64,000 bases of DNA from Magallana gigas (Eukaryota), in assembly GCF_963853765.1 (NCBI RefSeq), contig NC_088859.1, forward strand, positions 1,736,001 to 1,800,000, in the 5' to 3' direction. Both the position numbers and the translations under genes were made by a program. This document shows positions 8,701 through 46,489 of the stretch, piece after piece (within the stretch, counting starts at the first letter, position 1; each line of letters opens with the position of its first letter). Under the pieces are notes generated by a model. The model searched no databases and was not told the origin of the DNA. It worked only from the letters and a program-made list of their open reading frames with translations.

Positions 8701-11700
8701 TTTAATCATCATATTTACATGTTCAAGCGTCTTCGCCTGAGATAACACTACGAATCGATTTTGTAATATATAGTCCAATACAGTTCATCAATGATTATTT
8801 CAACAATTAATCGTACAATTGTTTACAATTATATATAAGTAATGAGGAATCATTCTTTGAATTTTATAAGGCTATCAAATACTGTCGGGTGTGATCAAAT
8901 CTATCGGGCTTTGTTGGAATTGATCACTCCCAACCGTATTTGATCACCTCATAATACTCAAAAAATGATTCCTTGTTCCTTGAATGAAAAAGATTATTTA
9001 ATTGTCAAGTGTATTGCCCGGTCTTGACACAAAATATTATAATACATGTATCAATGGATTTTCAAACGATTCATACAAGAATGCCCTTTTTCATGAGATT
9101 TTCTAGACGTTTTTCTTTTCGTAAACGACTTGTTTAATGTCAAAATTCAAAATAAATTTCTTTATAAATGCATGGGTATGTATCTCTTAGTAAAAAATAA
9201 CTATACAAAGAAGGTTGTATTCAAATACACAGCGAAAAGCATTATTTGCATTGAATATAATCAATATGTTTATGTAAGAATAGTCTTTGTGAATTCAAGA
9301 GGGCTTAATGGCCGTGGCCAGTTTTAGAGTGTTATGATTTTCATTAGAAGATGAGTTCTATTTTTTTTATAGGAAATGCAATTATTCAAAAGGTAAGACA
9401 TAAGGGGTTTTTCTTTACTAAATAACTGTTTATAGATTTGACCATCCAGCCTCCTTACTCCGAACATGTATATCTATTGATTGACCGCGCAGACTTTTTA
9501 ATGCATACAGTTGTGATTCTAAAAAAAATGTACTACCGAGGTTTGCACTTTATCATGTATTCAAAATATTTGTTAATTTGTCTTCAGTGTACATGAAAAT
9601 CACTGGCTTTGGAAACTCCATAATACAAAAGGTAACTTACATATCATTTTTTCAAAGAACGGTGCAGCTATATCTCCGAAGCCATTCCGACTGATGTCTA
9701 GGTAGTCCAATGTAGGATGGATCTGTTTGATACGAGTAAGCAATAATTAACATGCTATTAACTTAACGAAAACTTTTCTTTCTTCTGTATTTCATTCATA
9801 CTTACTTCTATTTCTTTTGTTAGAAATGTTGCGTCGAGATCGGTAAATTCGTTTCCTACAAACATATTTCAATATCTATATTAGAAAAATAATTGATATA
9901 GACTGTAAAGAGAAACTGAGTGCTGTTTCCATGGATGTCTACTGTTGGTTTTTACGATACATATTTGATAGGCTAACTTTATTCTGGTCCTGTTAACCAA
10001 AAATATTTCGTTGAACGGTCACCTCTTAAAGCTTTTTGTCCCAGAGTAATTAAATATAGCCTTCTTGGGACTAGGATACATTTACACAAGAAATATAATG
10101 AATCCTTTTCTTATCAATAGAGCATTGATATTATTTATTTTCATAAGAATATGCTTTATAATATCTAGCGAGTAAATTATACATATCTGTAAGAATATTT
10201 TAACGAATTGATATAAAACGAAGACGATTTTTATCATTTTCATTTACTCTCTAGTGATTTTATGCATTCTTAACACTTTTCAAATGTCATTCCTTTAAAT
10301 GGGTTTACTTTAAAATGAAGTTCACCTTCAGAATGTTTGCACATTAAACCCACTTGTACAAATTGACCTAAAGTTACTTAGTCTCCCAATTCTCATTCAA
10401 AATATTTACTCTCCCGAACTTACAATTACATATACTGACATTTAAACATGGACGGATTGAGAGAGAAAAGTCCCTTTATCCGAATCAAGCCTAATCCTAC
10501 AATGCATTAGATCAAGAGTGATATATCCTATCAAAAGAAAATCACCGGCAATGCTGAGTCTTCTGATTCCTTTGTTGTCTTGAAGCATCATTCCAATTGC
10601 CTTGGCCCCGAAAGTTTTTAAATGATTGTCGGAAACATCCTAATAAAAGAATTAAAGAAACATGACATTAATCTCCTGTAAAAATCACTGACAGTTCAGG
10701 TGTACTATATGTGATTCAATACTCTTATTAACAGCTGCAGTATATATTGTTCATTTTGTATTGTTAGCAGTGTGGAATCTTTTCTAGCCCTGGCCTTGAA
10801 TGCTAGGCGTGGCTTCAAATCCCGGCAGAAACAGGACATACTAGATCTAAGATTGCAATGCTCTTTATCTAGTGTTGACTAACTAGATCTACGATTGTAA
10901 TGTTCTCTATCTAGTGTTGACTTACTAGATCTACGATTGTAATGCTCTCTATCTAGTGTTGACTTTCTAGATCTACGATTGTAATGTTCTCTATCTAGTG
11001 TTGACTTACTAGATCTACGATTGTAATGTTCTCTATCTAGTGTTGACTTACTAGATCTACGATTGTAATGCTCTCTATCTAGTGTTGACTTACTAGATCT
11101 ACGATTGTAATGTTCTCTATCTAGTGTTGACTTACTAGATCTACGATTGTAATGTTCTCTATCTAGTGTCGACTTACTAGATCTACGATTGTAATGTTCT
11201 CTATCTAGTGTCGACTTACTAGATCTACGATTGTAATGTTCTCTATCTAGTGTTGACTTACTAGATCTATGATTGCAATGTTCTCTATCTAGTGTTGACC
11301 TACTAGATCTATGATTGTTATGCTCTCTATCCAGTGTTGACTTACTAGATCTATGATTGTAATGTTCTCTATCTAGTGTTGACTTACTAGATCTATGATT
11401 GTAATGTTCCATCTAGTATTGACTTACTAGATCTATGATTGTAATGTTCTCTATCTAGTGTTGACTTACTAGATCTATGATTGTAATATTCTCTATCTAG
11501 TGTCGACTTACTAGATCTATGATTGTAATATTCTCTATCTAGTGTTGACTTACTAGATCTATGATTGTAATGTTCTATATCGAGTGTTGACTTACTAGAT
11601 CTATGATTTTAATGTTCTCTATCCAGTGTTGACTTACTAGATCTATGATTGTAATATTCTCTATCAAGTGTCGACTTACTAGATCTATGATTGCAATGTT

Positions 11701-14700
11701 CTCTATCTAGTGTCGACTTACTAGATCTACGATTGTAATGTTCTCTATCTAGTGTTGACTTACTAGATCTACGATTGTAATGTTCTCTATCTAGTGTTGA
11801 CTTACTAGATCTATGATTGTAATGTTCTCTATCTAGTGTTGACTTACTAGATCTGTGATTGTAATATTCTCTATCTAGTGTCGACTTACTAGATCTGTGA
11901 TTGTAATATTCTCTATCTAGTGTCGACTTACTAGATCTATGATTGTAATATTCTCTATCTAGTGTCGACTTACTAGATCTATGATTGTAATATTCTCTAT
12001 CTAGTGTTGACTTACTAGATCTATGATTGTAATATTCTCTATCTAGTGTTGACTTACTAGATCTGTGATTGTAATTATATCTATCCAGTGTTGACTTACT
12101 AGATCTATGATTGTAATGTTCTCTATCTAGTGTTGACTTACTAGATCTATGATTGCAATGTTCTCTATCTAGTGTTGACTTACTAGATCTGTGATTGTAA
12201 TATTCTCTATCTAGTGTCGACTTACTAGATCTGTGATTGTAATATTCTCTATCTAGTGTCGACTTACTAGATCTATGATTGTAATATTCTCTATCTAGTG
12301 TTGACTTACTAGATCTATGATTGTAATATTCTCTATCTAGTGTTGACTTACTAGATCTATGATTGCAATGTTCTCTATCTAGTGTTGACCTACTAGATCT
12401 ATGATTGTTATGCTCTCTATCCAGTGTTGACTTACTAGATCTATGATTGTAATGTTCTCTATCTAGTGTTGACTTACTAGATCTATGATTGTAATGTTCC
12501 ATCTAGTATTGACTTACTAGATCTATGATTGTAATGTTCTCTATCTAGTGTTGACTTACTAGATCTATGATTGTAATATTCTCTATCTAGTGTCGACTTA
12601 CTAGATCTATGATTGTAATATTCTCTATCTAGTGTTGACTTACTAGATCTATGATTGTAATGTTCTATATCGAGTGTTGACTTACTAGATCTATGATTTT
12701 AATGTTCTCTATCCAGTGTTGACTTACTAGATCTATGATTGTAATATTCTCTATCAAGTGTCGACTTACTAGATCTATGATTGCAATGTTCTCTATCTAG
12801 TGTCGACTTACTAGATCTACGATTGTAATGTTCTCTATCTAGTGTTGACTTACTAGATCTATGATTGTAATTATATCTATCCAGTGTTGACTTACTAGAT
12901 CTATGATTGTAATGTTCTCTATCTAGTGTTGACTTACTAGATCTATGATTGCAATGTTCTCTATCTAGTGTTGACTTACTAGATCTGTGATTGTAATATT
13001 CTCTATCTAGTGTCGACTTACTAGATCTATGATTGTAATATTCTCTATCTAGTGTCGACTTACTAGATCTATGATTGCAATGTTCTCTATCTAGTGTCGA
13101 CTTACTAGATCTACGATTGTAATGTTCTCTATCTAGTGTCGACTTACTAGATCTGTGATTGTAATATTCTCTATCTAGTGTTGACTTACTAGATCTATGA
13201 TTGTAATATTCTCTATCTAGTGTTGACTTACTAGATCTATGATTGTAATTATATCTATCCAGTGTTGACTTACTAGATCTATGATTGTAATGTTCTCTAT
13301 CTAGTGTTGACTTACTAGATCTATGATTGCAATGTTCTCTATCTAGTGTTGACTTACTAGATCTGTGATTGTAATATTCTCTATCTAGTGTCGACTTACT
13401 AGATCTATGATTGTAATATTCTCTATCTAGTGTGGACTTACTAGATCTATGATTGTAATGTTTTATATCGAGTGTTGACTTACTAGATCTGTGATCGTGA
13501 TGTTTTCCTCCATCATCCTCTGTATATACAAGATCCCTGTTTTGTCGATATTATTGCCGCTGATATTAAGTGTGGTTACTGTTGAGTTAATCTGTGAATA
13601 AAGTGTAAGTCGTCATTACTGGTAACAGAATATTTGACTGACCTGTGCGAGGTCATTTATGTTCAAAGCTTAAAAGTTAAATCTTAATGTGTTCATTGTC
13701 GACAGTCATTCAAAGCGGTTGTGTTGAGTTCAATGTAATAAAATAACAAAATATATTAAAATGCATACTTTTTTTACTTTCCATATCAGTGTCACACACT
13801 TAAAACGTATTTTTTAATATTGTTTATTCATATATATCCGTACGTAGCAATTGTCAGGTCTATTCGAAAATCAAATTAAAACAAGTTCAATGTCTCACAC
13901 CTTTTTAAATATTCACATTACTTTTCAAGTATATGTTATGTGAAAATAATCAAAATATTTTATTATTTCCTAAACTATTGCTACCCGGTAATTGAAATTT
14001 AATACTTTATCAAGGGCACGGATACATAATAGATATCATGTTATGTAACAACAGGTGGGATGGATTTTACGGTTGGAAGACGATTTTGTTTTGTCACCTG
14101 TTAGCTTTTTGTACTCTTTCTCTTCTTATATGTATTGTTTTAAACAACATAATAATTATATATTAAGCAGTGTCCAGTTTATTAAGTTACATGTTTATTC
14201 ATATTAATTATGACTTATTTTTACATTAACTGTTAACTGTTGTGTTTTCTTTTATACTGTTTAAGTTGACTATGAGTGGACGGATTATTTTATAATCGAT
14301 CAAACGCTGGACTTTTTTGTCATTGTAGACAGTACTTACATTTATTTAGTATTACTGCAAAATAATCACATAACCGGCGAGTTGGTTTTATTTAATGAAT
14401 GCATACAATGTTCCAAATGAACTACCAAAGAAAGAATTTCAATTTATTATTGAATACTACTGATATTCAGTTCAGACTCCGAAGAACACCGCAAGTGGAT
14501 GAGCGTGTACTTACTACTAGGGCCACGGACACTGCCATGGTTCCTTTGGGGCCCAGTCCGTAGTGTCTGATGTCGATGCTGGGGGACTCCGCCAACTTCC
14601 GCAAGATCTTGGAGGAGGGAACCACGTCCAGTTTCTGGCAGATTTTCTCATACGTTCTTCTCCCCGTGTCATCGTAAGGAACGTGGGGAGCTGTTGGAAA

Positions 14701-20026: not shown

Positions 20027-20569
20027 CTATAAAAGACCAAGTTCAAGTTTGAGGAACATTTTGAGTGATGGGTTATCGATCTTATCTATTTCTCTTTTGG
20101 CACGTTCATTACCGTCTTTTTCATAATACTTTTTCAGTTCGTTTGCATACATGATCCATACACAGTTTGCACATCCACTCATGCAGCAATCGACCGGCGG
20201 CTCAGGTGGCATACCTTTACCTGGAATGACTTCTTTTGAACAACCAGATAGGGATTCTCCATTATCTTCATGGATGTAAGTGCTAAGTCCAGGGTCATCA
20301 TTTGAAACAGTATCAGTCTTATTGAGGTTACTTCTGCAAGTACTATCAATTGTATTAGAAATATTGCGGTCTAAATATTTATCTTTTTCATCAAGGTCAA
20401 TTAGAGGTTGTGTGATTTTTTTTTCAGTGGTCGGTCTCCCAGTGCTTTTCCCTCTAATATGTTCATTGATCCATATCTTTTGCCAAACATATTGAGATGT
20501 GCAGGTTGAAGAAAACTGATACTCGAGATGCCTCAATATGAAGTTGGTAAAACCAATTTGAAATCTCAT
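20027..20569 (-). CDS. OXLD1: Oxidoreductase-like domain-containing protein 1, about 180 aa
   Basis: C-terminal PPEPPVDCCMSGCANCVWIMYANEL is the oxidoreductase-like N domain motif, followed by IDNPSLKMFLKLEL. Acceptor tttcag 2 nt before the ATG. Probable non-coding first exon ends at 22251 (AAA|gtaagt). Confidence 0.88.
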   Translation of the reverse strand: MRFQIGFTNFILRHLEYQFSSTCTSQYVWQKIWINEHIRGKSTGRPTTEKKITQPLIDLDEKDKYLDRNISNTIDSTCRSNLNKTDTVSNDDPGLSTYIHEDNGESLSGCSKEVIPGKGMPPEPPVDCCMSGCANCVWIMYANELKKYYEKDGNERAKREIDKIDNPSLKMFLKLELGLL

Positions 20570-20768
20570 TTCTGAAAAATATAAATTGTACATGTACTTT
20601 TGCAAAACAGTTGGAATAAATTAACTCTATTAATTAACAACATGCACTGATCTAGAGGGTGTTTGGGGTTTCCTTACACCCCCCCCCCCACCCTTACAGA
20701 AATTATTTTATGGAGCAATGCATGTTCAAGAGTGAAAGGAAAAAAAATACTTATTTAACTAATATATA

Positions 20769-34193: not shown

Positions 34194-37100
34194 CTAAGTT
34201 TCTTTGATGATTTTTTCCTTGATGTCCCTTTTCCTGATTGCCTGTCGATGGAATTTCTCCCTGAATCCCGTCTCATTAAATTTATACGATGGCTCTTCGA
34301 GATAAAACACACTCGTATTCTTTTTCGAAGCCAATTTCAAATCCAAGTGTTTCTCTGTTACACCCTTATCCAAGTCGGAGAGATCCTGGGCCTCACTGTG
34401 TTCTACAGGGGACTGTGGAATCGGGTCCTTCCTGCTGGAATCTTCAATCTTGCGTTTATAAGACAAACTTTTGCAGAAACACGAAAATTTCTTCAATTTC
34501 CTGAATTTGTCGAGTTCCTCGCGCAAACCTTTGAATTTAGGCAGTAGTGAATCTGCCAACACATTGATGGCTTCTTCATTCTTGATGTGGGGCCTAAGTT
34601 GTTCCCATCCCTTTTTGGGGTCACCACATTGGTTTATGTCCCGCATGACCTTGGTAGGAATGACCTTCTGGGTGTAACATTTGTCGATGACCTCACGAGG
34701 TGGAACGTTTTCAATAATTTTACAGACGATGCACTTCAAGCGTCCATGTTTCTTTTCTTTATACATTATACTGAGCGATCGTTTCAGTGTTGTGTGGATG
34801 TGCCTGTAGTCTGGTTCCAACGCTTCCATAAAGCTCACAAAAGAACCGTGTCCGCGCTGTTCCAACATCAGCAGAAGGCTTCTTGCCTTTTCCCTTCTCC
34901 CTCCTCCTCTCCTTATATCCTCAGCATCACTAGCTGTAATGGCCTCCTCAGATATCAGCCGGTCCAAGATATCTGTGTCACTCAGGTCAATGTCTTTCAA
35001 AATGGTTTCATGTTCCTGAATCAGAACGTCTTTGTAAAGGCTGGCACATGCATCTGGAAGATCTAAAACGAGAATATGTCAAAAAAAAAAATTTGAACTT
35101 GGATAAACCGTTTGAAATCTAGCATGCAGGGAAATGCACTAACGAAGAAAAATATTCGAAGAACTGATGTACCATCTAATTTTATACTCCATGTGAATGA
35201 CTCGTCACTAGTACTGTTACTACTGGTATCGCTCAGATACACCGCAGGGTGGCGTTTGATCTTTGGTCTGATGCGCCATGGTAACACGTTGTTCGGACCC
35301 TTGTCTGTGAACAGCAACTTATTGTCCCTTGGTGTCGCATTCCCAGCATCCTCCCCATACAACTTATTGTCCCTTGGTGTCGCATTCCCAGCATCCTCCC
35401 CATACAACTTATTGTCCCTTGGTGTCGCATTCCCAGCATCCTCCCCATACAGCTTTATCTCGATTCGCGACACCCGCTCTGTGAGAAAATCTAGTTTCAC
35501 ATTGGTAGCTCTCAGCTCATTTAACAACGTGTTCTGGAGTTCGGCAAACATAGACTGTAAATGCATGTATACACGAGTAGGATTAGAGGGTTAGAACAAA
35601 CCATCGGCGGGTACATTCACACGTCGCTTAACAGAACTGACTTTGTCATTATGACTTACAGGTATTTTGTTGGGAGTTACCTTATTTTTTTTTCCGCATA
35701 ATCAAATTTTATGCACTATCTAAACTGTGTTTGCCTAAAATTATGTTAAGCTATACCGCTTTCATCCTTTGTAATTCAAATAAATATGCTGGTAATACCT
35801 GCAAAGGTACGGTGTGTTTACAAAGTGGGTGTGTTACTAAGAAATTATTTTGGGCTTACTCAATTCACAAATTGCACATTTTTCATGCTTCTGCTTCGTA
35901 GAACTTGCATTTTATTCACTTTGTTAATGCAAATAAAGAGTGGGGAAAATCACTACAGAACTTTACTTCCTGAATTTATTTATTTAATCAGCCAAATTTT
36001 TGTGTTGACTGTTTACCTTTCACTTTTACATTTTTTTATTGCATAATTTAATTATTATTTAATATGTCTGTATTAAACTTTTTGAATTTCGACTTAAAGT
36101 TTATACATGTTTTTTATTTGTGTATTATACCATGACATGAATATTTCCTTAACAACGCGAATAGAAAATCGCACCGATACATTTTTTACTAAGGGATGCA
36201 AAGACCGCATGAAAATTGAAGATGGAGCATTGCAATGTAACATGCCATATACGTATCACTTTTTTCAATACAAAACCGTCTTAGTCTATTTAAGAGAACA
36301 CATGTATATGTTTCCTAAAACCTGTTAAATTTTTTCTCGAAGCATAAGAAAAAATATTTCCAAAATTAACATATTACAGATTCTGCCTTAGAACAGTACA
36401 ATACTGTTTTCAAATTTCAAATTTTTACGCCTGGTAAATAACAGTTTTATGATTGGATAATCTTAAAAAGATCTGAGTCTTTTGATTTGTAACGATATTC
36501 AGGAAACAGCACAGAAGGAAACACATTGGAACTTGTTCGACTATTTTACGATAAGATAGAAAACTTCATAAGGACAAACATCCCCGGTTCCTGCTGTTAC
36601 GAATAGGCACATTGGCTGATATTTATTTGATAAAAGACTTACCTTCAAGTGTCCAGTGAAGTCTCCACACTCCTCGGCATACCTAAGTATTAAGTGTCAT
36701 AAGAATTAGGTCGGACATCGTGGTACATAGTAAATATTAAGTCGTACATACGAGATACTTAGTCGTATATACGATATGCTAAGTCGTACATATACAAACT
36801 ACTAAGTCGTACATACGACTAAGTCGTATATACGAGCTACTAGGTCGTACATACGAGCTACTAAATCGTACATAAGATGTACTAAGTCGTACATACGAGA
36901 TGCTACGTCGTTCATACGAGTTGCTAAGTCTTACATACGAGATGATAAGTTGTACGCACAAGATACTAAGTCGTGCATACGAAATAATATGTCGTACATA
37001 CGAGATGCAATAAGTCCTACATAAGAGACGTATGTACAGGATACTATGTCCTACGTTCAAGATATCACATCATGATAACGAACCATTTTGTCTTTATTAC

Positions 37101-38237
37101 GAGAAACTATCTCGTTATAACGAGACACTATCCCATACATGTACGTATGACTTGGCATCTCGTATGTATGACTAAGTAAAAATTTTATTCAATTGGCATC
37201 AATAGGTTAGCTATATTTCGAACATGGTGCGCCAAAAAGTTGAGGAAGAATTCATTTTATATTACACATAAAAACAAAATTACTCAAATTAAAAAATGCC
37301 TTTATGTGAACTTTGAGAAGTGATAAAATGATATGAGCCTTTGTATATACTATATAGCCAAACAATGGCGGTTAGGAAACCAATTCTTTTGAAATAATAA
37401 ATTAAACTAAGTGATAAAACGTAACTACATATTGTACTAGTATATTATCCACATTTAATTACTATTTGATTTTTATGTTCACCTCCACGCTCAGTCTAGC
37501 TGTATTTTTAAGTGACTATGCCTACATATCTGTGCATAAGTGGGTGTATTGTATAAAAATCTTGATAGTGAATACGGATGCATATACCTGTATCTACACT
37601 GATAAGATGTTTTAACGTTTGTTTAGTAATCTTCTCTTCTCTGAGTTATTCTGTTTACAAAGCCCCGTCAGATTTTACGCATTGTTTTTTTTTAATTTTT
37701 TTTAAATATGCACTAAATAGATATATTGCAGGAGGTTTCATGAATTTGCTGATTGGTTGCGATAGAAGGTAAACTTCCTAATTTCACATATTTTCTTAAT
37801 CACACAAATTGTGTAAGTATCTGAGAGAATATAACAAAAACATCTTATATGTTCAAATCAAAGTAAAAAATGGCTGTATAGTTTATATAATTTTAAGAAT
37901 TGGACTCATCTACAATTTAATATGTGGAAAATGCCAAACACCCTTGCTTGAAATGTAGCCAATAAACTATTTTTGGTTCCCTCATTTTACTTTACCTATA
38001 TTATATCCAAGTGATGCATCACTTTAAAAAATTTAAGTTAAAACTATCTAGTTAAAACAATATCAGCGAACTTGAAATAATAAATAAAACATGTAAAAAG
38101 TGGCAAAGTATACATAGCTGCCGTGACAAAAGCATCCATCATGATGACAGTCTCAGGCCTGTTTGTATTAAAGGAAGACATACTAACTTCAAATATGTAA
38201 TAACCTACCCTGAATCTTCTTTCTGCAACGAAGCCAT
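34194..38237 (-). CDS. Uncharacterised CARD-domain protein, paralog 1 (DSG motif, coiled coil, 15-aa repeats, CARD, CARD-like), 439 aa
   Basis: Exons 38209-38237, 36643-36682, 35173-35554, 34194-35062; phases 2/0/1 consistent (1320 nt). N-terminus MASLQKEDSGYAEECGDFTGHLKSMF. CARD: YKDVLIQEHETILKDIDLSDTDILDRLISEEAIT...RREKARSLLLMLEQRGHGSFVSFMEALEPDYRHI. Confidence 0.8.
35316..35456 (-). repeat. Coding 45-bp tandem repeat, three copies (KLYGEDAGNATPRDN)
   Basis: Three identical units starting at 35316, 35361, 35406. They account for the exact 90-nt length difference from the paralog-2 exon. Confidence 0.95.
36720..37560. repeat. Block with about 21-bp subrepeats (AAGTCGTACATACGAGATACT), duplicated at about 38680-39365
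   Basis: Both the subrepeat array and the unique sequence after it recur about 1.9 kb downstream. Confidence 0.75.
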
Positions 38238-40923
38238 CTCCGTGCCTAGACGTGATCAAATCATCGCTAGTCACTAACTCCATGCATTGTTTCACGATCA
38301 ATAAGGTGCTGCTATAACCCTGTTTATTTTCGAATAGATAAATTTAAAAAAAAATGAAAATACCTGTGTAGAATCGTTTAAGGGTTGAACATTCTTGATT
38401 CATTGTCAGTTGCTTAAGTTTATCTGAAGGGGAAGTCTTTAGGAAAGTCTGATGAGACTTTACCCGATGACCTCTAAATCAGATACTAGTTTCTAAGAGA
38501 TTTGTTTTCAACAACCAGTTCTTTCCATACCACAACAGAAAAAATGTTGTAAAAACCGAAAATGATAATTTGATGCAATAATGGAACAATTCAGAAAATT
38601 TGCCATATTGAAATCCCTGACAAAATGGTTATCCAAATTTCCGTAGGCAAAGTCCGGTTATTGCAATGGTAATAGAAAATCGTACATACGAAATATTACT
38701 TCGTACATACGAGATTCTTAGTCGTACATATGAGATGCTATGTCGTACATACGAGATACTAGATCGTACATACAAAATGCTAAGTCGTGCATACGAGATA
38801 CTCAGTCGTACTATATACGAGATATACTATATACTACATAAGAGACGTATGTACAAGATACTATGTCCTACTTTCAAGATATCACATCATGATAACGAAA
38901 CATTTTGTCGTTATTACGGGAAACTATCACGTTATAACGAGACACTATCCGAATACATGTACATGTACGATTTGGAATCTCGTATATATGTCTATATTAA
39001 ATAAAAATTATTTTGATTCGGCGGCAATAGGTTATCTTGGATAAGCTATATTTCGATTACAATGCGCCAAAAAGCTGAGGATGATCTTCATTTTGTATTA
39101 CACATAAAAATAAGTAAAATATGCCTATGCATGTACCTTGAGAAGAGATAATTTGGTATCAATGAGCCTTTGTATAAACTATATTATAATAGTCAAACGA
39201 TGACGGTTAGGGAAACCAACCAATAATACAAGTACAAAGTTTTAATAGTTTTTCATCATCCACATAAAAATACGACTTGATTTTTTGATGTGCACCTCCG
39301 CGCTCTATCTAGCTGTATTTTAAGTGACTATGCCTACGCGTCTGTGCGTAAGTGGGTGTAATGTATTCAATGCGGATATATGGGACATTATCTGCGTCAT
39401 TCGGAAGTTAAACATGGACAAAGTAACCTCTCCCGATCTGTCCTTTGAATATGCATTGCTTCACGGTCAATAAAGTGCAAACTGTCGTAACAAGGTTTAT
39501 CTTCGTGTAGATAAATAAAAAAGTGAAACTACCTGACGGGTGTAGAATCTTTTAACCAAAGGCTGAACATTCTTGATTCTTTTTCAGTTGCTAAAGTTTA
39601 TCTGAAGGGGAAGTCTTCGGGAAAGTCTCACAAGATTTTACCCGATTTTTTTAGCCTGTTGCTCCATAAGCAAATAAAGAACGTATATAGCGAACAAGAT
39701 TATCTGATGCGTGTGTCTTACGATTTACTCCAACATATAAATGTGTATTTTTTGTATATATAACTTGTAATGTAAAAACAACTGATTTTTGTAGCGGATT
39801 CATTAATCAAATAGTGCAATTTAAGGTTCAAATGGAGGAGTTGATTTAAAAATCAACTTAAAAAACCCAAATGCATTAAAAATAGAAATAACGCTAAAAA
39901 GGGATCTTACCCTCTCTGCTGTCCTTCTGCTCCATAAGTTATATTGAAAAATTATCGCCTTAGTGGTATAAAATATATTTTATAGTATAAGCCAAAGAAC
40001 CTTTCTCTATAATAAAATTTAAAGCGGTCAAACAATGTTTTTCAATATATTAAAAAAAATCGACACAAATGTTGCTTGGGGATGGCGCTGTGCTGCTGTC
40101 TTTAATTAAAGATTACCTCCAATATTAGCTGAAATGTTTTTAAAAAGTATTGTGAAGAAAAGAAAACACAATCGATCTAATGTATCATTTTTTGTACAAA
40201 AGCAAAGACTAAAATCGAAAAGACTTCTAAATCAGATACTAGTAACTATTAGTTTGGGGTTTTTTCTATACAACAAAAAACAATTTTTGTAAAAAAAAAA
40301 AAAAAAAACAAACGAAAAGCTATTTCTAGTAAAAAATGCAATGATTGAACAATTCAGAAATTTTGTCATCTTCAAATGTTTGACAAAATGGTTATCCAAA
40401 TTTAATTCACTGGTAAAATTGGCAGACGGGAGGCTGCCAAAAGGGTACCCAAAACTCTTCCTACAGTTTGCATGATAGGACGTTTTTTGCTTTGCAGATC
40501 AATTGTACAAATATTAGAGATGTACATATTACTTGGATTTTTATTATTGTTAATTTTGGCGAAAAATACTAGCGGTTGAACTTTTCTTGCATTTTTTGGG
40601 CATATTACTAGGATTTTGGTTTTTGATGCCCCAAAAAAGAATACCAGCTGTTGAACTTGATTATTATTTTTTTAATTGCAAATAGGGTAACCTTATTTTC
40701 CGGATAACTCCTCTGACCTTTTTCATGATTGGAGATTTTGTTTTACGGACCAATTGTACACACACTAGTACATCAGAGGTGTGGGTATTGCTTAGATTTT
40801 GATAATTTATGCAAAAAAAAACCATCTGTTGAACTATTGACATATAATGTTATAGATCTATGGTATTCCAAACATTTACATTCATTGAAAACTTTCCTTG
40901 ATACATTTGAAACTTAGACACGT

Positions 40924-40933
40924 GGGACTTTCC
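40924..40933 (+). promoter_or_regulatory. Perfect NF-kB consensus site GGGACTTTCC
   Basis: Exact classical kB decamer, 2.7 kb upstream of the paralog-1 ATG. A single motif; function unproven. Confidence 0.3.
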
Positions 40934-41397
40934 TTCTAGATTTTCAATGAGCGTAAATGTAAATATTGAACAGTTTTATTTCAGTTCACATTACATGTAA
41001 CAATTCCAAATGGATTGAATTTATGTATAAATAATTTTAGAAAGGTGTTTTTGAATTACATCGTGATAATGGAGAAACGACTTTGAAATATTGTTAAACA
41101 AACCTGAAACTTGGAATGATACTGGAATTATAGGAACCTTGAATTATTCCAGCTTCAGCAGAGAAAAAGATTTCATATAACAGTACACCTAATTTACAAA
41201 TATGTAGGATTACATAATTCCTCTGTTATTGCCAGTGTTTTTGGTTTTTTTATTTAGCAAAACACGATGAGTTTAAACAGGTGTTTTGAACATAAAATCT
41301 ATCATGTCGTGTCATTATCAGCACTTGTCACATTACTGTTTGCAAGAAATGATGCCTGCAATGTTTGTTTTGTCCATTGAAGACTGGTATATATTTC

Positions 41398-44300
41398 TTA
41401 CGTTTCTGGGATTGCTCTTTCCTTCATGTCCTTTTTTCTGATTGCCTGTCGATTAAACTTGTCTCTGAATCCTGTTTCTTTGAATCTACACACTGGCTCC
41501 ATCGCTGGCACAACGGAGTTTGTGTTCTCCTCCGACGTCACTTCCATATCCATATCATTATCTATTACACCCTTATCCAAGTCGGAGAGATCCTGAGCCT
41601 CGCTGTGTTCTATAGGGGACTGTGGAATCGGGTCCTGCCTTTTGGATTCTTCAATCTTGCGTTTAATTGACAACCTCTTGCAAAAACACGAAAATTTCTT
41701 CAATTCACTAAATTTGTCGAATTCCTCGCGCAAACCTTTGAATTTTGGTAGTAGTGAATCTGCCAACACATTGATGGCTTCTTCATTCTTGATGTGGGGC
41801 CTAAGTTGTTCCCATCCCTTTTTGGGGTCACCACATTGGTTTATGTCCCGCATGACCTTGGTAGGAATGACCTTCTGGGTGTAACATTTGTCGATGACCT
41901 CACGAGGTGGAACGTTTTCAATAATTTTACAGACGATGCACTTCAAGCGTCCATGTTTCTTTTCTTTATACATTATACTGAGCGATCGTTTCAGTGTTGT
42001 GTGGATGTGCCTGTAGTCTGGTTCCAACGCTTCCATAAAGCTAACAAAAGAACCGTGTCCGCGCTGTTCCAACATCAGCAGAAGGCTTCTTGCCTTTTCC
42101 CTTCTCCCTCCTCCTCTCCTTATATCCTCAGCATCACTAGCTGTAATGGCCTCCTCAGATATCAGCCGGTCCAAGATATCTGTGTCACTCAGGTCAATGT
42201 CTTTCAAAATGGTTTCATGTTCTTGAATTAGAACGTCTTTGTAAAGGCTGGCACATGCATCTGGAAGATCTACAACGACAATTTCGAAAGTGGTATATAT
42301 ATTTTTTATAGAGAAAAAAATGATATGAAAGATCAGAAAGTCGTGAAGCGCTGATTTACCGTTAACATCCAGTTTCATACGGAACGACCCATCACTGCTA
42401 CTTGTATCAATATCGTCGCTCAGATCCACAGCAGGGAGGCGTTTGATCTTTGGTCTGGTTCGCCCTGATAGCATGTTGACTGGACCCCTGCCCCGCAGCA
42501 GTGTCCTGTCGACACCTGGTGTCAGAGTTTGGTTATCCTCTCCATACAGCTTCATCTCGATTCGAGACACCCGCTCTGTGAGATCATCTAGTTTGTCGTT
42601 TGTGGCTTTTATCTCAGTTAAGAATGTGTTTTGGAAATTGGTAAGCATAGACTACAATGTTTAAAAATACACAATTAAATGCTGTTTCCCAAAATACCTT
42701 ATTATTTTGCTTAACATGGGTGACTAACTCTTTGATTATTAAATAAATTTGTTTCGGTTTTTTATCAACGTCTGTTTTCTATATTCAAAGTACATTCCTT
42801 TATAAGGTTATATTTACAAATCTTTATGTAACCTTAACACACTTTTCATGAAATGGAAAAACTTCAGATACTCTGGTATCACATGTACACGTGAATTTAC
42901 AAGGTGGGCGTTTTAGGTACCTGATTTTTGGGTTTATCCATGCACATATTACATATTTTCGTGCCTTTACATGTAACCTTTTTCCTCCGTGATATCACAT
43001 TTCTCAACTGATACACTAAAAATGTCTAGCTGTATAAACGCATACGATCACTACACTAAACTAAAGACTCGTGGTCCACATCTCTAACCTATACACAATG
43101 GACAACTGTAAATCAAATTGCTAACTAACTGTGCAATAATATCAAATACAACACAATTAAAAATTTTATATAAGCATTATACTTTTATCAGTATTTAACA
43201 CTCTTAACCAAATATCTCCATTAATGTACAAGTAATTTGTAAAGTCCTTTATACAAATCTTTTTTACCCCCCCCCCCCCCCCCCCCCCAAAAAAAAGAAG
43301 AAATTGATTGTGTTCTCTCCTTCGTATTGTATCCCATTTTGTCCCGCTTTTTTCAGTATTTTTTATCGATGGACTATTGCTTGCCACCATGAGTCAACTG
43401 AGGGTTTTTTCTATGCAGAAGCAAATTGAAATCAAGAAACAGTAGTAGTCTGTTTCTGAATATCTTTTGAAAAAAAAGAGCGAATCTTTAAAGGGACTTG
43501 GACACGATTTCAGCTCAAAATCTTCAAATTTTGTTTTTCCATTATGTTTTTCCATTATGTTTTTCCATTATGTGTAGAATGGATAATATCGGTATTGTTA
43601 ATGATTCCTCTAAATTTGAAAATCAAATATCGAGTAACAAGAAGGATTAAGAGTATGAAGTTCTTTGTTTCGTAAACAAAGATCATGTCTTGTTATTGTT
43701 TGCATATGTGTTGTATTGGTATAAGTTTCAATTAAATGGTACTGTCTATTTTTTTTTTTATAATATCATTTATGCACACAGAATCAGTTTATCTTGTTTG
43801 CAACGAGTCATTTTGTCAAAGAAATGGTAAATTCCTTACTTTACGTTTTTTGTAAACAAATATAAGACTCGAGTTTTATTAACATGACAATGATTTCTTA
43901 CTTCTGTATCTCGCTCGTAACTTCACGTCTAACATTCAAATTTTTGTCAATCATTCAAAATGCACATGTAAACCATTTTATCCATTGGTTTACATGCATT
44001 AAAAAATAAAATGTTGATCTTAAATTGTGTCTAAGTCCCTTTAATGAGTACAAAATATTTTTAGAAAAGGACCACTCTTGATAAATAAAAACAGAGAGAT
44101 CCTTTCTGCTTTTGGTGATAATTAAGCAACGATAGTTTGATCGATTCGTTGTTTGAAATATTTGAGGAAGGTGGGCTTCATATATGATATTAATGCTAGA
44201 AGAAATAAAAACAAAAAATCCTATTTTTGCTTTTTGTAATGGTTAACTTCAGGTGCTTTCATGGTTTTAACTTCAACTGCTTTGACATTCTTCTGTCGTT

Positions 44301-46240
44301 GCATTTCTTCTTATGTGAGTCTTAATCCTTACAAGATGTGCATGGTGGACATTTTTACTCATTTTTTGCCATCTTTGTGTAGGTGTAGAAAATTATAGAA
44401 ATTTATAGATATTGCAGTGCTTTTGTCCATTTTGAATTGTATTTATTTCATTGTTGATAACTATGAATTATCTTGAAATATTAACTAAGAATGGTCAAGT
44501 CATATAACATCGATAAGCAAGTTGTTTCAAATTGTGAGATGACATAAATTAGTTGTAGATTGATATCCTCGCAACCAAGTATCTCGGGTAGACAATGTTT
44601 ACATTATTTGAGAATTAATCACTTGAGAAATATTTTTAAAAAAAATCAGTAGTTTAATCCAAACAAAAAATTAATTTAAAAACATGGTATAACCTAGTAT
44701 GTAACTGAATACGCAATGATTCATTTATGTGCATATCATAATGTGGTAAGTTACATGTAGGTTATTCTCACAAAAAGGATTTAAATGACCCGACCTAAAT
44801 ATGAAATTAATGTTCCACACCCCTGGTCATAGGACAACAAAACAAAGTTAAGGTTTTGCACGGAGAGAACATAAGCATGGTGTCTGCTGTCCATATAATT
44901 GTTTAAGATGAATAGAATAATTGTTGAACTAATCAGACTAAGGTCCGAATGTAATGGGCTATCGTACAGTAGATTTAAAAAAAATGTAATTTGTCTTGTT
45001 TAAACCATAAATTTAAATTATCAACTTAAGGTTGATACGCTCGGTTCTGAATGAAAACTTTGAGACCGTGTAAATCTGGTAACGTCTTTGAGGTCAAAGG
45101 GATAGTGTAAATATAGTACGAAAGATTATAAGGAGATCTAAAAACAAACAGAATTTGTGCCGACGCCCTTGCAGTGTTATGGATGACACCAATAAATCAC
45201 TTACCTTAAGGTCTCCTAGTAAGTCCCCGAACTCTTCAGCATACCTATGGACCAAAATAATAACGTCGGGAAAATTAGTACGTAACATTGTCCGCGACGT
45301 TCTGATGCTTCATATAAGTTTTTCTTTCCTTTTATTCAGTTATTATTTAATAAAATATTATTTATTAAAATATTGTACATTCAATACTCAATATTTCTTA
45401 GTTATTGACATTTTAACAGGAAAAAAACCCAAAGCAAACATTGAAAATGAAGATAATAAGATAAATGTATACATGTACATTACAGTGATATCTGATACAT
45501 TTGTAAAAGTGCACATTTTCATTTCTGTTGTAACATGTCTTAATAAATAAAGTAAAGTAATAAATAAATAAAATGTTTTCTCTATTTTAAGACGCCTTGC
45601 ATGTGGTATTTTATCGCTGTCCAATGCTATTATGTCAAATAATATTATGTCAAATGCTAATCTAATCTTATTTTCTATTAATGGTTAATGTTTACATAAA
45701 CATCGAATTACTGAGCTTGTTTGGTCATACACTGCATATGATTGCATCTGATGAGAGAAATCCTGAAGATATGTTTGATATAAATCCCTCTATAAAGTTA
45801 CAAAACAAAACAAACTGTGGACCAAACGTACACTGTCCTTTTCATTACATCAATACATAATGTAAGCATTTGTGTTCTTCTATTTTGATAGATGGCGCAA
45901 ATAACGAGAAATTGATGTACGTGTCGGCAAACTATTAAATGGGCTAAGATTGCGATGTAGATGCAAAGCCTACAGAAATAAAGCTCAAATTAATTTTTTT
46001 TTAATGATAAAAAGCAACTTGTGAACTTTCCACCTTAGTTGCTCTTCAATGTGATCTACTGATAGATACATCGGACTTTCGAAAATCTACTGACTTCTCA
46101 CTGCAAAGTCTATGGTGCACTTCGTGAGAAAATTACGTTAATACTTAGTTTTAAAAGTACTCTATGCACGGGTAGAAAACATAGATCTGTCCCAATCTGA
46201 ATGTATTTACAGAGCCTACTGAAATCTAGATCAGCATACT
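41398..46240 (-). CDS. Uncharacterised CARD-domain protein, paralog 2, 410 aa
   Basis: Exons 46212-46240, 45205-45244, 42360-42651, 41398-42269; same exon sizes and phases as paralog 1 (1233 nt). N-terminus MATLQKADSGYAEEFGDLLGDLKSML. The 90-nt last intron is open, which explains the 416-aa track ORF. Confidence 0.8.
43492..44040. mobile_element. Complete 549-bp MITE with TTAA target duplication (Kolobok/piggyBac-type)
   Basis: TTAA (43488-43491), AGGGACTTGGACACGATT ... AATTGTGTCTAAGTCCCT, TTAA (44041-44044). Confidence 0.8.
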
Positions 46241-46489
46241 TCCAATTATAGTTAAGTTTTTAAGTACCTACCCTGAATCTGCTTTCTGTAAGGTAGCCAT
46301 CTTAATATTTGTGTTTACACACATACATTGTAATATGTCAACGCATGCTCGCCTACGTATTTTAAAGGAATTTAAACATGGGCGAAACCAAATTATTTTA
46401 TTCTTTTAGAAACAAGACTAGATAACTATTGGACCGCGACTCTATTTAAATGGAGCGGTCTGACCGGGTTCAATTTTTATTCAATGAAT

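What the first reader, a model, noticed from the sequence alone, without database searches (positions are those of the whole stretch)
34194..46240. Tandem pair of uncharacterised degron-like / coiled-coil / double-CARD genes: candidate innate-immune or cell-death regulator module
Seen: both proteins start M-A-x-L-Q-K-x-D-S-G-Y-A-E-E, a motif split over a 29-nt exon and a 40-nt micro-exon and retained although the micro-exons are only 70% identical (12/40 differences). Next come a coiled coil, KIKR plus an acidic Ser patch, a clear CARD, and a second CARD-like segment bracketed by CIVC and CFC; there is no protease, NACHT, helicase or TM domain. Established: DSGxxS is the beta-TrCP phosphodegron of IkB and beta-catenin, acidic substitutions are tolerated, and catalytic-free CARD proteins act as adaptors or decoys. 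Inference: signal-degraded CARD adaptors or inhibitors. I recognise no named family with this architecture.
Basis: partly seen in the sequence, partly recalled or inferred. Interest (0 to 1): 0.72.

Follow-up and report, generated by a model that had tools for sequence, protein, structure and literature searches.

The report
Oyster coiled-coil tandem-CARD gene pair
Two neighbouring, expressed Pacific-oyster genes encode enzyme-free proteins with a long helix and two CARD (death-fold) domains, the second bracketed by four conserved cysteines; they belong to a large, unstudied mollusc family, and their role in immunity or cell death is untested.

Summary
Both genes lie on the minus strand, have four coding exons and are annotated only as uncharacterised (Magallana gigas LOC105327448 and LOC105327447). 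RNA contigs show all three splice joints of gene A, and a cDNA-like contig shows them for gene B. So the 29-nt and 40-nt exons are used.

- **N-terminal motif:** MA-x-LQK-x-DSG-[YF]-[AE]-E is kept in all 7 complete oyster orthologues (Magallana, a sister species, Saccostrea, Ostrea).
- **First CARD:** clear, Pfam E 2e-12.
- **Second segment:** also a CARD. Profile-profile probability is 97.8%, the model has pLDDT 85 with six helices, and its best structural matches are almost all CARDs (Z up to 9.5).
- **Cysteine bracket:** CxxC...CxC recurs in 93 of about 108 such domains.
- **Family range:** all named relatives are molluscs. In abalone the same module is a caspase prodomain.

The proteins are therefore not orphans, but no named or studied family fits them.

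The beta-TrCP degron idea stays untested. The motif ends in Glu, not Ser/Thr, although the genome does encode beta-TrCP. An invariant TRAF6-like SP[VI]EHS motif is only a lead.

Gene conversion keeps the tandem-CARD exon 497/500 nt identical between the two copies.

Most likely these are oligomeric, non-catalytic CARD scaffolds. Interest is moderate.

The parts
34194..38237 (-). Gene A = M. gigas LOC105327448 (XP_011426239.3, 439 aa), start codon to stop
   Evidence: Exon borders are GT..AG. RNA joints are seen for all three introns. Product is identical to P0199.
38209..38237 (-). Gene A coding exon 1 (29 nt): MASLQKEDS + GG of the Gly codon
   Evidence: Joint 36682-38209 in an X2 RNA contig.
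36643..36682 (-). Gene A micro-exon 2 (40 nt): (G)YAEECGDFTGHLK
   Evidence: Joints on both sides in an X2 contig, and one X22 raw read.
35173..35554 (-). Gene A exon 3: long helix, 3 x 15-aa repeat, RPKIKR plus Ser/acidic patch (35195..35269)
34194..35062 (-). Gene A exon 4: tandem CARD plus tail plus stop codon
34782..35027 (-). Gene A CARD1
   Evidence: Pfam PF00619, E 2.1e-12, 47.3 bits, residues 12-93 of the exon-4 product.
34473..34733 (-). Gene A CARD2 with its cysteine bracket (CIVC ... CFC)
   Evidence: hhalign against the CARD1 profile gives 97.8%. AF2 pLDDT is 85 with six helices. VIA Z is 9.5 to the Apaf-1 CARD. Cysteine conservation.
34392..34412 (-). Gene A invariant SPVEHSE island (fits the TRAF6-binding pattern P-x-E-x-x-[acidic/aromatic])
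   Evidence: S368 P369 E371 H372 S373 are invariant in 10 oyster sequences. The pattern is not enriched in the wider family.
34218..34280 (-). Gene A conserved basic C-terminal motif F-x-E-x-GFREKFHRQAIRK
   Evidence: Invariant F412 F417 R418 F421 R423 Q424 A425 I426 K428.
35315..35455 (-). 45-nt coding tandem repeat, 3.1 copies (KLYGEDAGNATPRDN)
   Evidence: Other records have one copy (P0001; the 409-aa RefSeq versions).
34543..35062 (-). Gene-conversion tract of gene A (partner in gene B: 41750..42269)
   Evidence: 497 of 500 aligned bases are identical. Flanking coding sequence is 59-88% identical and the introns do not align.
41398..46300 (-). Gene B = M. gigas LOC105327447 (XP_011426238), conserved start codon to stop
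   Evidence: tblastn of P0003 against the window, splice sites, names.
46272..46300 (-). Gene B coding exon 1 (29 nt): MATLQKADS + GG
45205..45244 (-). Gene B micro-exon 2 (40 nt): (G)YAEEFGDLLGDLK
   Evidence: Spliced in P0003.
42360..42651 (-). Gene B exon 3: helix, RPKIKR, DTSSSDGSF patch
41398..42269 (-). Gene B exon 4: CARD1 (41989..42234), CARD2 with cysteine bracket (41680..41940), tail, stop
   Evidence: Pfam CARD E 3.3e-12. Translation.

Best explanation
The locus holds an old tandem duplicate of one gene. Both copies are expressed.

Each encodes an enzyme-free protein of about 410-440 aa with these parts, in order:
1. a conserved 14-residue N-terminal motif;
2. a long amphipathic, probably coiled-coil helix;
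3. a disordered basic/Ser-acidic linker;
4. a canonical CARD;
5. a connecting helix;
6. a second, divergent CARD whose ends carry CxxC and CxC;
7. a disordered tail with two invariant short motifs.

Shown here: the gene models and their splicing, the two CARD folds, conservation of the motifs and cysteines, and membership of a large mollusc family built on the CARD plus Cys-bracketed CARD module.

Inferred:
- The four cysteines bind a zinc ion that ties the two ends of CARD2 together.
- The helix makes the protein an oligomer, so several tandem CARDs sit side by side.
- This oligomer seeds or joins CARD-CARD assemblies with a CARD-bearing partner and so acts as a scaffold or regulator.
- The most likely partner is a caspase-2/9-type caspase or an Apaf-1-like protein. 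CARD1 is most like the Apaf-1, caspase-9, ARC and ICEBERG CARDs, and abalone caspases carry the same module as their prodomain.
- The N-terminal DSG motif and the SP[VI]EHS island are docking sites for regulators. Their partners, beta-TrCP and TRAF6, are only guesses from pattern matches.
- Gene conversion keeps the tandem CARD of the two copies identical, so both should bind the same partner and could co-assemble. Their helices and tails have diverged.
For: - **Gene models and expression:**
- **CARD1:** Pfam E 2e-12. Its nearest solved sequences are Apaf-1 (E 2e-10), CARD8, ARC, ICEBERG and caspase-9.
- **CARD2 is a CARD:** hhalign against CARD1 gives 97.8%, E 1.2e-12. Of 101 CARD2 segments, 33 hit Pfam CARD, best E 1.4e-10. 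The profile's best PDB hits are MDA5 CARD2, Apaf-1, NLRP1 and CARD11. The model has pLDDT 85 and six helices. VIA Z is 9.5 to 6.1 to about 30 CARDs, ahead of PYD, DD and DED. All Atlas matches are CARD clusters.
- **Cysteine bracket:** present in 93 of about 108 CARD2 domains. One member has CxxH and three have HxC nearby.
- **Family:** 252 representatives at E<=0.001. All named ones are molluscs. About 9-10 loci occur in this genome.
- **Caspase link:** abalone caspases P0116 and P0149 carry the module.
- **Helix:**
- **Motif conservation:**
- **Concerted evolution:** paralogues are 99.5% identical in the tandem CARD but 59% in the N-terminal part, and a sister species shows the same pattern.
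Against: - No functional, interaction or induction data exist for these genes or for any family member.
- Zinc binding is inferred from conservation only.
- The heptad signal is weak in gene A (262/2000 shuffles).
- In this oyster genome no module locus lies next to a caspase domain, so no caspase with the same module exists here to act as a cognate partner.
- The full-length model is poor (pLDDT 52.8).
- Foldseek E-values for CARD2 alone are weak (best 0.23). The case for the fold rests on the VIA Z-scores plus the sequence profiles.
Confidence: 0.6

Rival explanations
1. The proteins are adaptors or inhibitors whose abundance is set by signal-induced degradation. Phosphorylated DSG[YF][AE]E at residues 8-13 is recognised by SCF-beta-TrCP, as in IkappaB and beta-catenin.
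For: D-S-G-[YF]-[AE]-E is kept in 7 of 7 complete orthologues across Magallana, Saccostrea and Ostrea, through synonymous changes between the paralogues. The region is predicted disordered (pLDDT 33-38). The genome encodes one beta-TrCP D domain (E 1.3e-22). From my own knowledge, not tested here: acidic residues can replace the second phospho-Ser, as in CDC25B DDGFVD.
Against: Position 6 is always Glu, so the strict pattern D-S-G-x(2,3)-[ST] is not met. The whole 14-residue block is conserved, not just DSG, which fits any docking motif. The only upstream Lys is two residues from the motif, whereas (my knowledge) classical substrates use a Lys about 9-13 residues upstream. DSG-type patterns are not enriched in the wider family (6 observed, 4.4 expected). 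The related bivalve proteins P0015, P0016, P0022 and P0232 lack the motif.
Confidence: 0.2
2. Decoys. The proteins are prodomain-like, protease-less relatives of a tandem-CARD caspase that cap or poison caspase CARD assemblies, as ICEBERG/COP/INCA do for caspase-1 or cFLIP does for caspase-8.
For: The same CARD plus Cys-bracketed CARD module is the prodomain of abalone caspases P0116 and P0149 (Peptidase_C14 E 1e-52 and 5e-29). CARD1 is closest to the Apaf-1, caspase-9, ARC and ICEBERG CARDs. No catalytic domain is present.
Against: None of the 9-10 module loci in this genome lies near any of 61 caspase-domain matches. The added helix and conserved tail motifs suggest more than passive capping. 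Known CARD-only decoys are single CARDs of about 90-110 aa. The direction of evolution (caspase lost, or module gained by abalone caspases) was not resolved.
Confidence: 0.2
3. Signalling adaptor to NF-kappaB, working like MAVS or BCL10. CARD-CARD assembly with an upstream sensor clusters the tail, whose SP[VI]EHS[E/D/Y] motif recruits TRAF6.
For: The island is invariant in 10 oyster sequences inside an otherwise variable tail and fits P-x-E-x-x-[aromatic/acidic]. Oyster MAVS has been shown to recruit oyster TRAF6, which activates NF-kappaB (PMC5557890). The CARD2 profile's top solved hit is MDA5 CARD2 (E 0.0011).
Against: The pattern is loose and not enriched in the wider family (17 proteins observed, 17.3 expected). 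CARD1 resembles apoptosome-type CARDs, and MAVS and RIG-I are absent from its listed best matches. The CgMAVS locus (contig 8, 29.33 Mb) is not hit by either family search, and its CARD is split over two exons without the cysteine bracket. No kappaB or ISRE site lies at either promoter.
Confidence: 0.15
4. No role in immunity or cell death. The death-fold module serves as a general oligomerisation unit for some other process, for example a nuclear body or a developmental scaffold.
For: There is no evidence of induction. Expression is low in the two raw polyA runs sampled (5 and 21 reads from about 1% of each run). A basic KR-rich stretch follows CARD2. Neighbouring genes are unrelated to immunity: a linker histone and a retroelement.
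Against: Almost all characterised CARDs act in apoptosis, inflammation or NF-kappaB signalling (established knowledge). Relatives include caspases. Lineage-specific expansion and gene conversion are common in immune gene families, though that is only an analogy.
Confidence: 0.15

Closest known systems
Abalone tandem-CARD caspases (Haliotis diversicolor 'caspase-8' AYK02334.1 = P0116; H. asinina XP_067665466 = P0149)
   Same: They have the same two-domain module, a CARD followed by a CARD-like domain bracketed by CxxC and CxC, and they are found by the family profile.
   Different: They carry a Peptidase_C14 caspase domain; the oyster proteins have none. They lack the N-terminal DSG motif and the oyster tail motifs. 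Identity in CARD2 is only 17-20%.
RIG-I / MDA5 tandem CARDs (2CARD)
   Same: Two consecutive CARDs. The CARD2 profile's best solved-sequence hit is MDA5 CARD2 (E 0.0011). Structural Z is 7.4 to MDA5 CARD2 and 6.8 to RIG-I CARD2.
   Different: There is no helicase or C-terminal RNA-binding domain. The cysteine bracket is absent from RLR CARDs. CARD1 is closer to Apaf-1-type CARDs.
CARD-only regulators (ICEBERG/CARD18, COP/CARD16, INCA/CARD17) and ARC/NOL3
   Same: They are non-catalytic CARD proteins. ICEBERG and ARC are among the closest solved sequences to CARD1 (E 9e-9 and 7e-9).
   Different: Those have a single CARD of about 90-200 aa, are restricted to vertebrates, and have no coiled coil, second CARD or cysteine bracket.
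MAVS (including oyster CgMAVS, PMC5557890)
   Same: A CARD followed by a second death-fold domain (in CgMAVS) and a tail that recruits TRAF6. One family member, from Sinanodonta (P0131), has a MAVS-like C-terminal tail anchor.
   Different: The window proteins have no membrane anchor. The CgMAVS locus is not detected by the family searches, and its CARD is split over two exons without the bracket.
CARD9 / CARMA (CARD plus coiled coil)
   Same: They combine a CARD with a coiled coil, and the CARD9 CARD binds zinc (PDB 6e25, Z 8.0 to CARD2).
   Different: The order is reversed: here the helix precedes the CARDs. There is no sequence relationship outside the CARD, and no MAGUK region.

Membership tests
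CARD (Pfam PF00619), first domain | Match to the family model above its gathering score (23.9 bits) | tested here: met
   47.3 bits (gene A) and 46.7 bits (gene B), covering model positions 3-83 of 85.
CARD / death fold, second domain | Match to the Pfam CARD model by the protein itself | tested here: not met
   The gene A/B second domain gives no Pfam hit on its own (part A). However, 33 of 101 homologous segments do, with best E 1.4e-10.
CARD / death fold, second domain | Six-helix bundle with remote homology to CARDs | tested here: met
   hhalign 97.8%, E 1.2e-12. Six helices, pLDDT 85. Z 9.5 to Apaf-1 CARD, with CARDs filling the top ranks. Atlas TM 0.57-0.64 to CARD clusters.
Structural zinc site ('zinc clasp') | Four conserved Cys/His ligands close in space, and bound metal | tested here: inconclusive
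   All four Cys are present in 93 of about 108 domains. One member has CxxH and three have HxC nearby. Geometry and metal content could not be tested.
beta-TrCP phosphodegron (ELM-type pattern D-S-G-x(2,3)-[ST]) | Sequence pattern | tested here: not met
   The motif is D-S-G-[YF]-[AE]-E in all 7 orthologues, with Glu at the last position.
beta-TrCP phosphodegron | Phosphorylation-dependent binding to beta-TrCP and degradation | not testable with these tools
   Only the presence of a beta-TrCP D domain in the genome was shown.
TRAF6-binding motif (P-x-E-x-x-[aromatic/acidic]) | Sequence pattern in a disordered region | tested here: met
   SP[VI]EHS[E/D/Y] is invariant in 10 oyster sequences and the tail is low-confidence. 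The pattern is loose and not enriched family-wide. Binding was not tested.
RIG-I-like receptors | DExD/H helicase and RIG-I C-terminal domain after the tandem CARDs | tested here: not met
   Pfam finds only CARD in P0199 and in the exon products.
MAVS | C-terminal transmembrane tail anchor | tested here: not met
   Among the 159 proteins held, the only C-terminal membrane anchor of a complete family member is in P0131. P0003, P0004, P0009 and P0011 have none. The tails end in a basic Lys/Glu-rich stretch.
Caspases | Peptidase_C14 domain | tested here: not met
   It is absent from both products. No caspase-domain match lies near any module locus in this genome.
Coiled coil | Long helix with heptad repeat of hydrophobic residues | tested here: inconclusive
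   A 48-residue helix with pLDDT 58-79. Heptad score against shuffles: gene B 17/2000, Ostrea 71/2000, Tegillarca 1/2000, gene A 262/2000.

The most novel reading that the evidence does not exclude
Molluscs have an undescribed subtype of death-fold module: a CARD fused to a second CARD whose N- and C-termini are tied by a zinc ion. It has been shuffled onto caspases (abalone), a tail anchor (a freshwater mussel), an MLLE domain (abalone) and coiled coils (oysters, ark clams, scallops). On this reading the oyster pair would be a coiled-coil signalling hub. Its level would be set by a one-phosphate beta-TrCP degron, and its output would run through TRAF6 or a CARD caspase.
Probability: 0.12. Interest if true: 0.7.

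Novelty: new variant of a known kind. Interest (0 to 1): 0.45.

Why it matters
Oysters and other bivalves have greatly expanded cell-death and innate-immune gene sets, and most of the expanded adaptors have never been studied.

This work turns two 'uncharacterized' RefSeq genes into a defined architecture. It also shows that the CARD plus Cys-bracketed CARD module is a recurrent mollusc building block that appears on caspases.

If the four cysteines bind zinc, this would be a distinct metal-stabilised death-fold subtype.

If the conserved N-terminal and tail motifs bind beta-TrCP and TRAF6, the pair would connect CARD assembly to regulated turnover and NF-kappaB in a commercially important animal that suffers mass mortality from OsHV-1 and Vibrio.

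Concerted evolution confined to the tandem-CARD exon gives a clean natural example of selection, or conversion bias, keeping an interaction surface identical between paralogues.

Tried and rejected
1. **CgMAVS membership.** I located the CgMAVS locus with a published primer sequence (contig 8, 29.33 Mb). Its CARD is split over two exons, lacks the cysteine bracket, and is not hit by the family searches. Rejected.
2. **RLR origin.** The non-bracket tandem-CARD hits in the deep search (P0065, P0082 and others) have no helicase domain. There is no support beyond a weak MDA5 CARD2 match.
3. **A cognate oyster caspase with the module.** None of 61 caspase-domain matches lies near a module locus.
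4. **TRAF6, TRAF2 and DSG patterns in the tails of 86 family members.** No enrichment over shuffles.
5. **ISRE and kappaB sites at the promoters.** None. One consensus kappaB site lies between the genes, at chance level.
6. **Papers.** Nothing on the gene or protein ids, on tandem-CARD bivalve proteins, or on such a module in the caspase surveys I read.
7. **Language-model look-alikes.** Only an unnamed mollusc CARD cluster.
8. **Foldseek on the full-length model and on CARD2.** All hits are CARDs but the E-values are weak. The VIA search was clearer.
9. **Weak Pfam hits.** DUF5709 and the matrilin coiled coil score below their cut-offs and were disregarded.
10. **Zinc geometry.** Model coordinates are not exposed, so Cys-Cys distances could not be measured.

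**Spliced model.** I neither typed a spliced model nor sent one to any search. Searches used single exons by reference, or database records returned by the tools (P0003, P0184, P0199). The one joined step was a local translation of the 69 nt of exon 1 plus exon 2 of each gene, to check the reading frame.

Full report
**What is there**

The window comes from Magallana (Crassostrea) gigas, contig 7 of a 564-Mb assembly. The finding covers two paralogous minus-strand genes.

- Gene A coding exons: 38237..38209 (29 nt), 36682..36643 (40 nt), 35554..35173 (382 nt), 35062..34194.
- Gene B coding exons: 46300..46272 (29 nt), 45244..45205 (40 nt), 42651..42360, 42269..41398.

All borders are GT..AG.

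Cluster look-up names them LOC105327448 (gene A; XP_011426239.3, 439 aa, stored as P0199) and LOC105327447 (gene B; XP_011426238, stored as P0184). Both are 'uncharacterized protein' or 'CARD domain-containing protein'.

**Splicing and expression**

RNA-library contigs of run X2 carry all three joints of gene A. Run X10 confirms intron 3, and one raw polyA read of X22 crosses intron 2. In both raw-read runs every first mate lies on the + strand, as expected for a minus-strand RNA in a typical stranded library.

P0003, a 1770-nt Logan contig with 32 cluster members, is the fully spliced gene B product and includes MATLQKADSGYAEEFGDLLGDLK.

Expression in the two sampled raw runs is low: 5 and 21 reads from about 1% of each run.

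**The N-terminal motif**

Within MA-x-LQK-x-DSGYAEE the paralogues differ only by two replacements at the x positions and by synonymous changes.

The motif M-A-[STG]-L-Q-K-x-D-S-G-[YF]-[AE]-E is present in all seven orthologues with a complete N-terminus. These are both M. gigas genes, both genes of a sister species, Saccostrea echinata, S. cucullata and Ostrea edulis isoform X1. More distant bivalve relatives with the same overall layout lack it: Tegillarca P0015, scallop P0022, and the oyster paralogues P0016 and P0232.

The motif is therefore real, under constraint, and specific to the oyster orthologue group.

Whether it is a beta-TrCP degron is open.
- For: it lies in a low-confidence, probably disordered stretch, and the genome encodes a beta-TrCP D domain.
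- Against: the last position is always Glu, so the strict pattern is not met. The whole block is conserved, not just DSG.

**The two CARDs**

CARD1 matches Pfam CARD at E 2e-12 in both genes. Its nearest solved sequences are Apaf-1, CARD8, ARC, ICEBERG and caspase-9.

The second segment gives no Pfam hit by itself. Four independent lines show it is a divergent CARD:
- A profile of 101 homologous segments aligns to the family's CARD1 profile with 97.8% probability, E 1.2e-12.
- 33 of those segments hit Pfam CARD on their own, best E 1.4e-10. One paralogue in this genome (L006) has its best CARD match in the second domain.
- The profile's best solved-sequence hits are MDA5 CARD2, Apaf-1, NLRP1 and CARD11.
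- A model built on the 101-sequence alignment has pLDDT 85 and six helices. Its structural neighbours are CARDs almost without exception: Z 9.5 to Apaf-1, 9.1 to a chain of the CED-4/CED-3 holoenzyme (8jol_C) and 8.0 to CARD9, ahead of PYD, DD and DED.

**The cysteine bracket**

I searched the deep-search hits with a core profile that excluded the cysteine columns. Of about 108 second-domain matches, 93 carry both CxxC just before helix 1 and CxC about ten residues after helix 6.

Among the exceptions, one has CxxH at the aligned position, and three have a His two residues before the remaining Cys.

High conservation against a 27% mean column identity, a cytosolic setting and Cys/His exchange all point to a zinc site tying the two ends of the domain. 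Geometry and metal content could not be tested here.

**The wider family**

A profile search of 1.84 billion representatives found 252 proteins at E<=0.001, most of them matching across CARD1, linker and CARD2.

Every named member is a mollusc: Pinctada, Tegillarca, Mytilus, Saccostrea, Ostrea, Ylistrum, Mercenaria, Sinanodonta and four Haliotis species.

The module is combined with different partners:
- a caspase domain in abalone (P0116, deposited as 'caspase-8', and P0149);
- an MLLE domain (P0111);
- a C-terminal tail anchor (P0131);
- N-terminal helices in oysters, ark clams and scallops.

This genome has about 9-10 module loci. None lies near any of 61 caspase-domain matches. The characterised oyster MAVS is not a member. 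I found no paper describing the genes or the module.

**Other conserved features**

Within the oyster group three more blocks are invariant or nearly so:
- R-P-x-[IL]-[KR]-R followed by a D-T-S-S-S-D-G-S-F-type patch, which is also present in Tegillarca;
- an island S-P-[VI]-E-H-S;
- a basic C-terminal block G-F-R-E-K-F-H-R-Q-A-I-[RK]-K.

The island fits the TRAF6-binding pattern, and oyster TRAF6 is known to be recruited by oyster MAVS. However, the pattern is loose and not enriched in the tails of 86 other family members (17 observed, 17.3 expected). It is a lead, not a finding.

**Concerted evolution**

The introns of the two genes do not align, and the flanking coding sequence is 59-88% identical. 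Yet 497 of 500 bases from 35062 to 34543 equal gene B's 42269..41750.

At protein level the paralogues are 99.5% identical in the tandem CARD, against 59% in the N-terminal part and 66% in the tail. In the sister species the paralogues are also closer to each other (96.7%) than to their orthologues (95.1%) in this region only.

Gene conversion has therefore repeatedly homogenised exactly the two-CARD module.

**Mechanism**

I commit to this reading: a non-catalytic scaffold, oligomeric through its helix, that takes part in CARD-CARD assemblies.
- Shown: the folds, the conservation, the family and the expression.
- Inferred: zinc binding, oligomerisation, the partner, and the meaning of the short motifs.

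The apoptosome-type flavour of CARD1 and the abalone caspases favour a caspase-linked role slightly over an RLR/MAVS/TRAF6 role. Decoy, activator and degron-controlled versions cannot be told apart without experiments.

**Verdict**

This is a new variant of a known kind, a death-fold adaptor. It sits in genes that are already annotated but uncharacterised. Interest is moderate.

I neither typed a spliced model nor sent one to a search tool. Searches used single exons by reference or database proteins returned by the tools. The only joined step was a local 69-nt translation of exons 1 plus 2.

Noticed in passing
window 35315-35455 (gene A exon 3): A 45-nt in-frame tandem repeat (KLYGEDAGNATPRDN) has 3.1 copies here. 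The Logan contig P0001 has one copy and the older RefSeq versions (409 aa against 439 aa) are shorter by 30 aa, the length of two units, so this is a coding copy-number polymorphism.
   Followed up: partly
window 42270-42359 (gene B intron 3): The intron is 90 nt long, in frame and free of stop codons, which gives the 416-aa open frame 41398..42648. One Logan contig (P0002) retains it. Gene A's intron 3 is 110 nt and cannot be read through.
   Followed up: partly
window 46324 (gene B exon 1): An upstream in-frame ATG adds MCVNTNIK to the RefSeq 418-aa model. The conserved start (MATLQK) has the stronger Kozak context and matches all orthologues, so the 410-aa form is the likelier product.
   Followed up: partly
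window 36700-37555 and 38635-39366: A repeated element of about 0.8 kb, made of a 21/42-bp minisatellite plus flanks 83-91% identical, sits once in gene A's intron 1 and once upstream of gene A. It looks transposon-like.
   Followed up: partly
window 38380-38468 and 39558-39646: An 89-nt segment just upstream of gene A's first coding exon is duplicated 1.2 kb further upstream at 88% identity. It may be a duplicated promoter or 5' UTR piece.
   Followed up: no
window 40924-40933: A perfect kappaB consensus GGGACTTTCC lies between the two genes, 0.5 kb downstream of gene B and 2.7 kb upstream of gene A. The number of such sites in the window (6) is not far above chance (2.2 expected).
   Followed up: partly
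window 49162-49857 (+), 56139-58199 (-), 10879-12502 (-), 20027-20605 (-): Neighbouring open frames are a linker histone H1-like gene, a reverse-transcriptase ORF of a retroelement, two repetitive ORFs with below-threshold PPI_Ypi1 matches, and an Oxidored-like N-terminal domain ORF. There is no immune gene cluster around the pair.
   Followed up: partly
P0116 (Haliotis diversicolor AYK02334.1) and P0149: The abalone protein deposited as 'caspase-8' has a CARD plus Cys-bracketed CARD prodomain. The name implies death-effector domains, which Pfam does not list for it at E<=0.001.
   Followed up: partly
P0131 (Sinanodonta woodiana), P0111 (Haliotis rufescens): Two family members pair the module with other parts. 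One has a C-terminal tail anchor, a MAVS-like layout. The other has a C-terminal MLLE (PABP-type) domain.
   Followed up: no
G000 contig 6, 52814703-52814945 (L015): This module copy has an internal TAA and lies 41 kb from the intact paralogue L012. It is probably a pseudogene.
   Followed up: no
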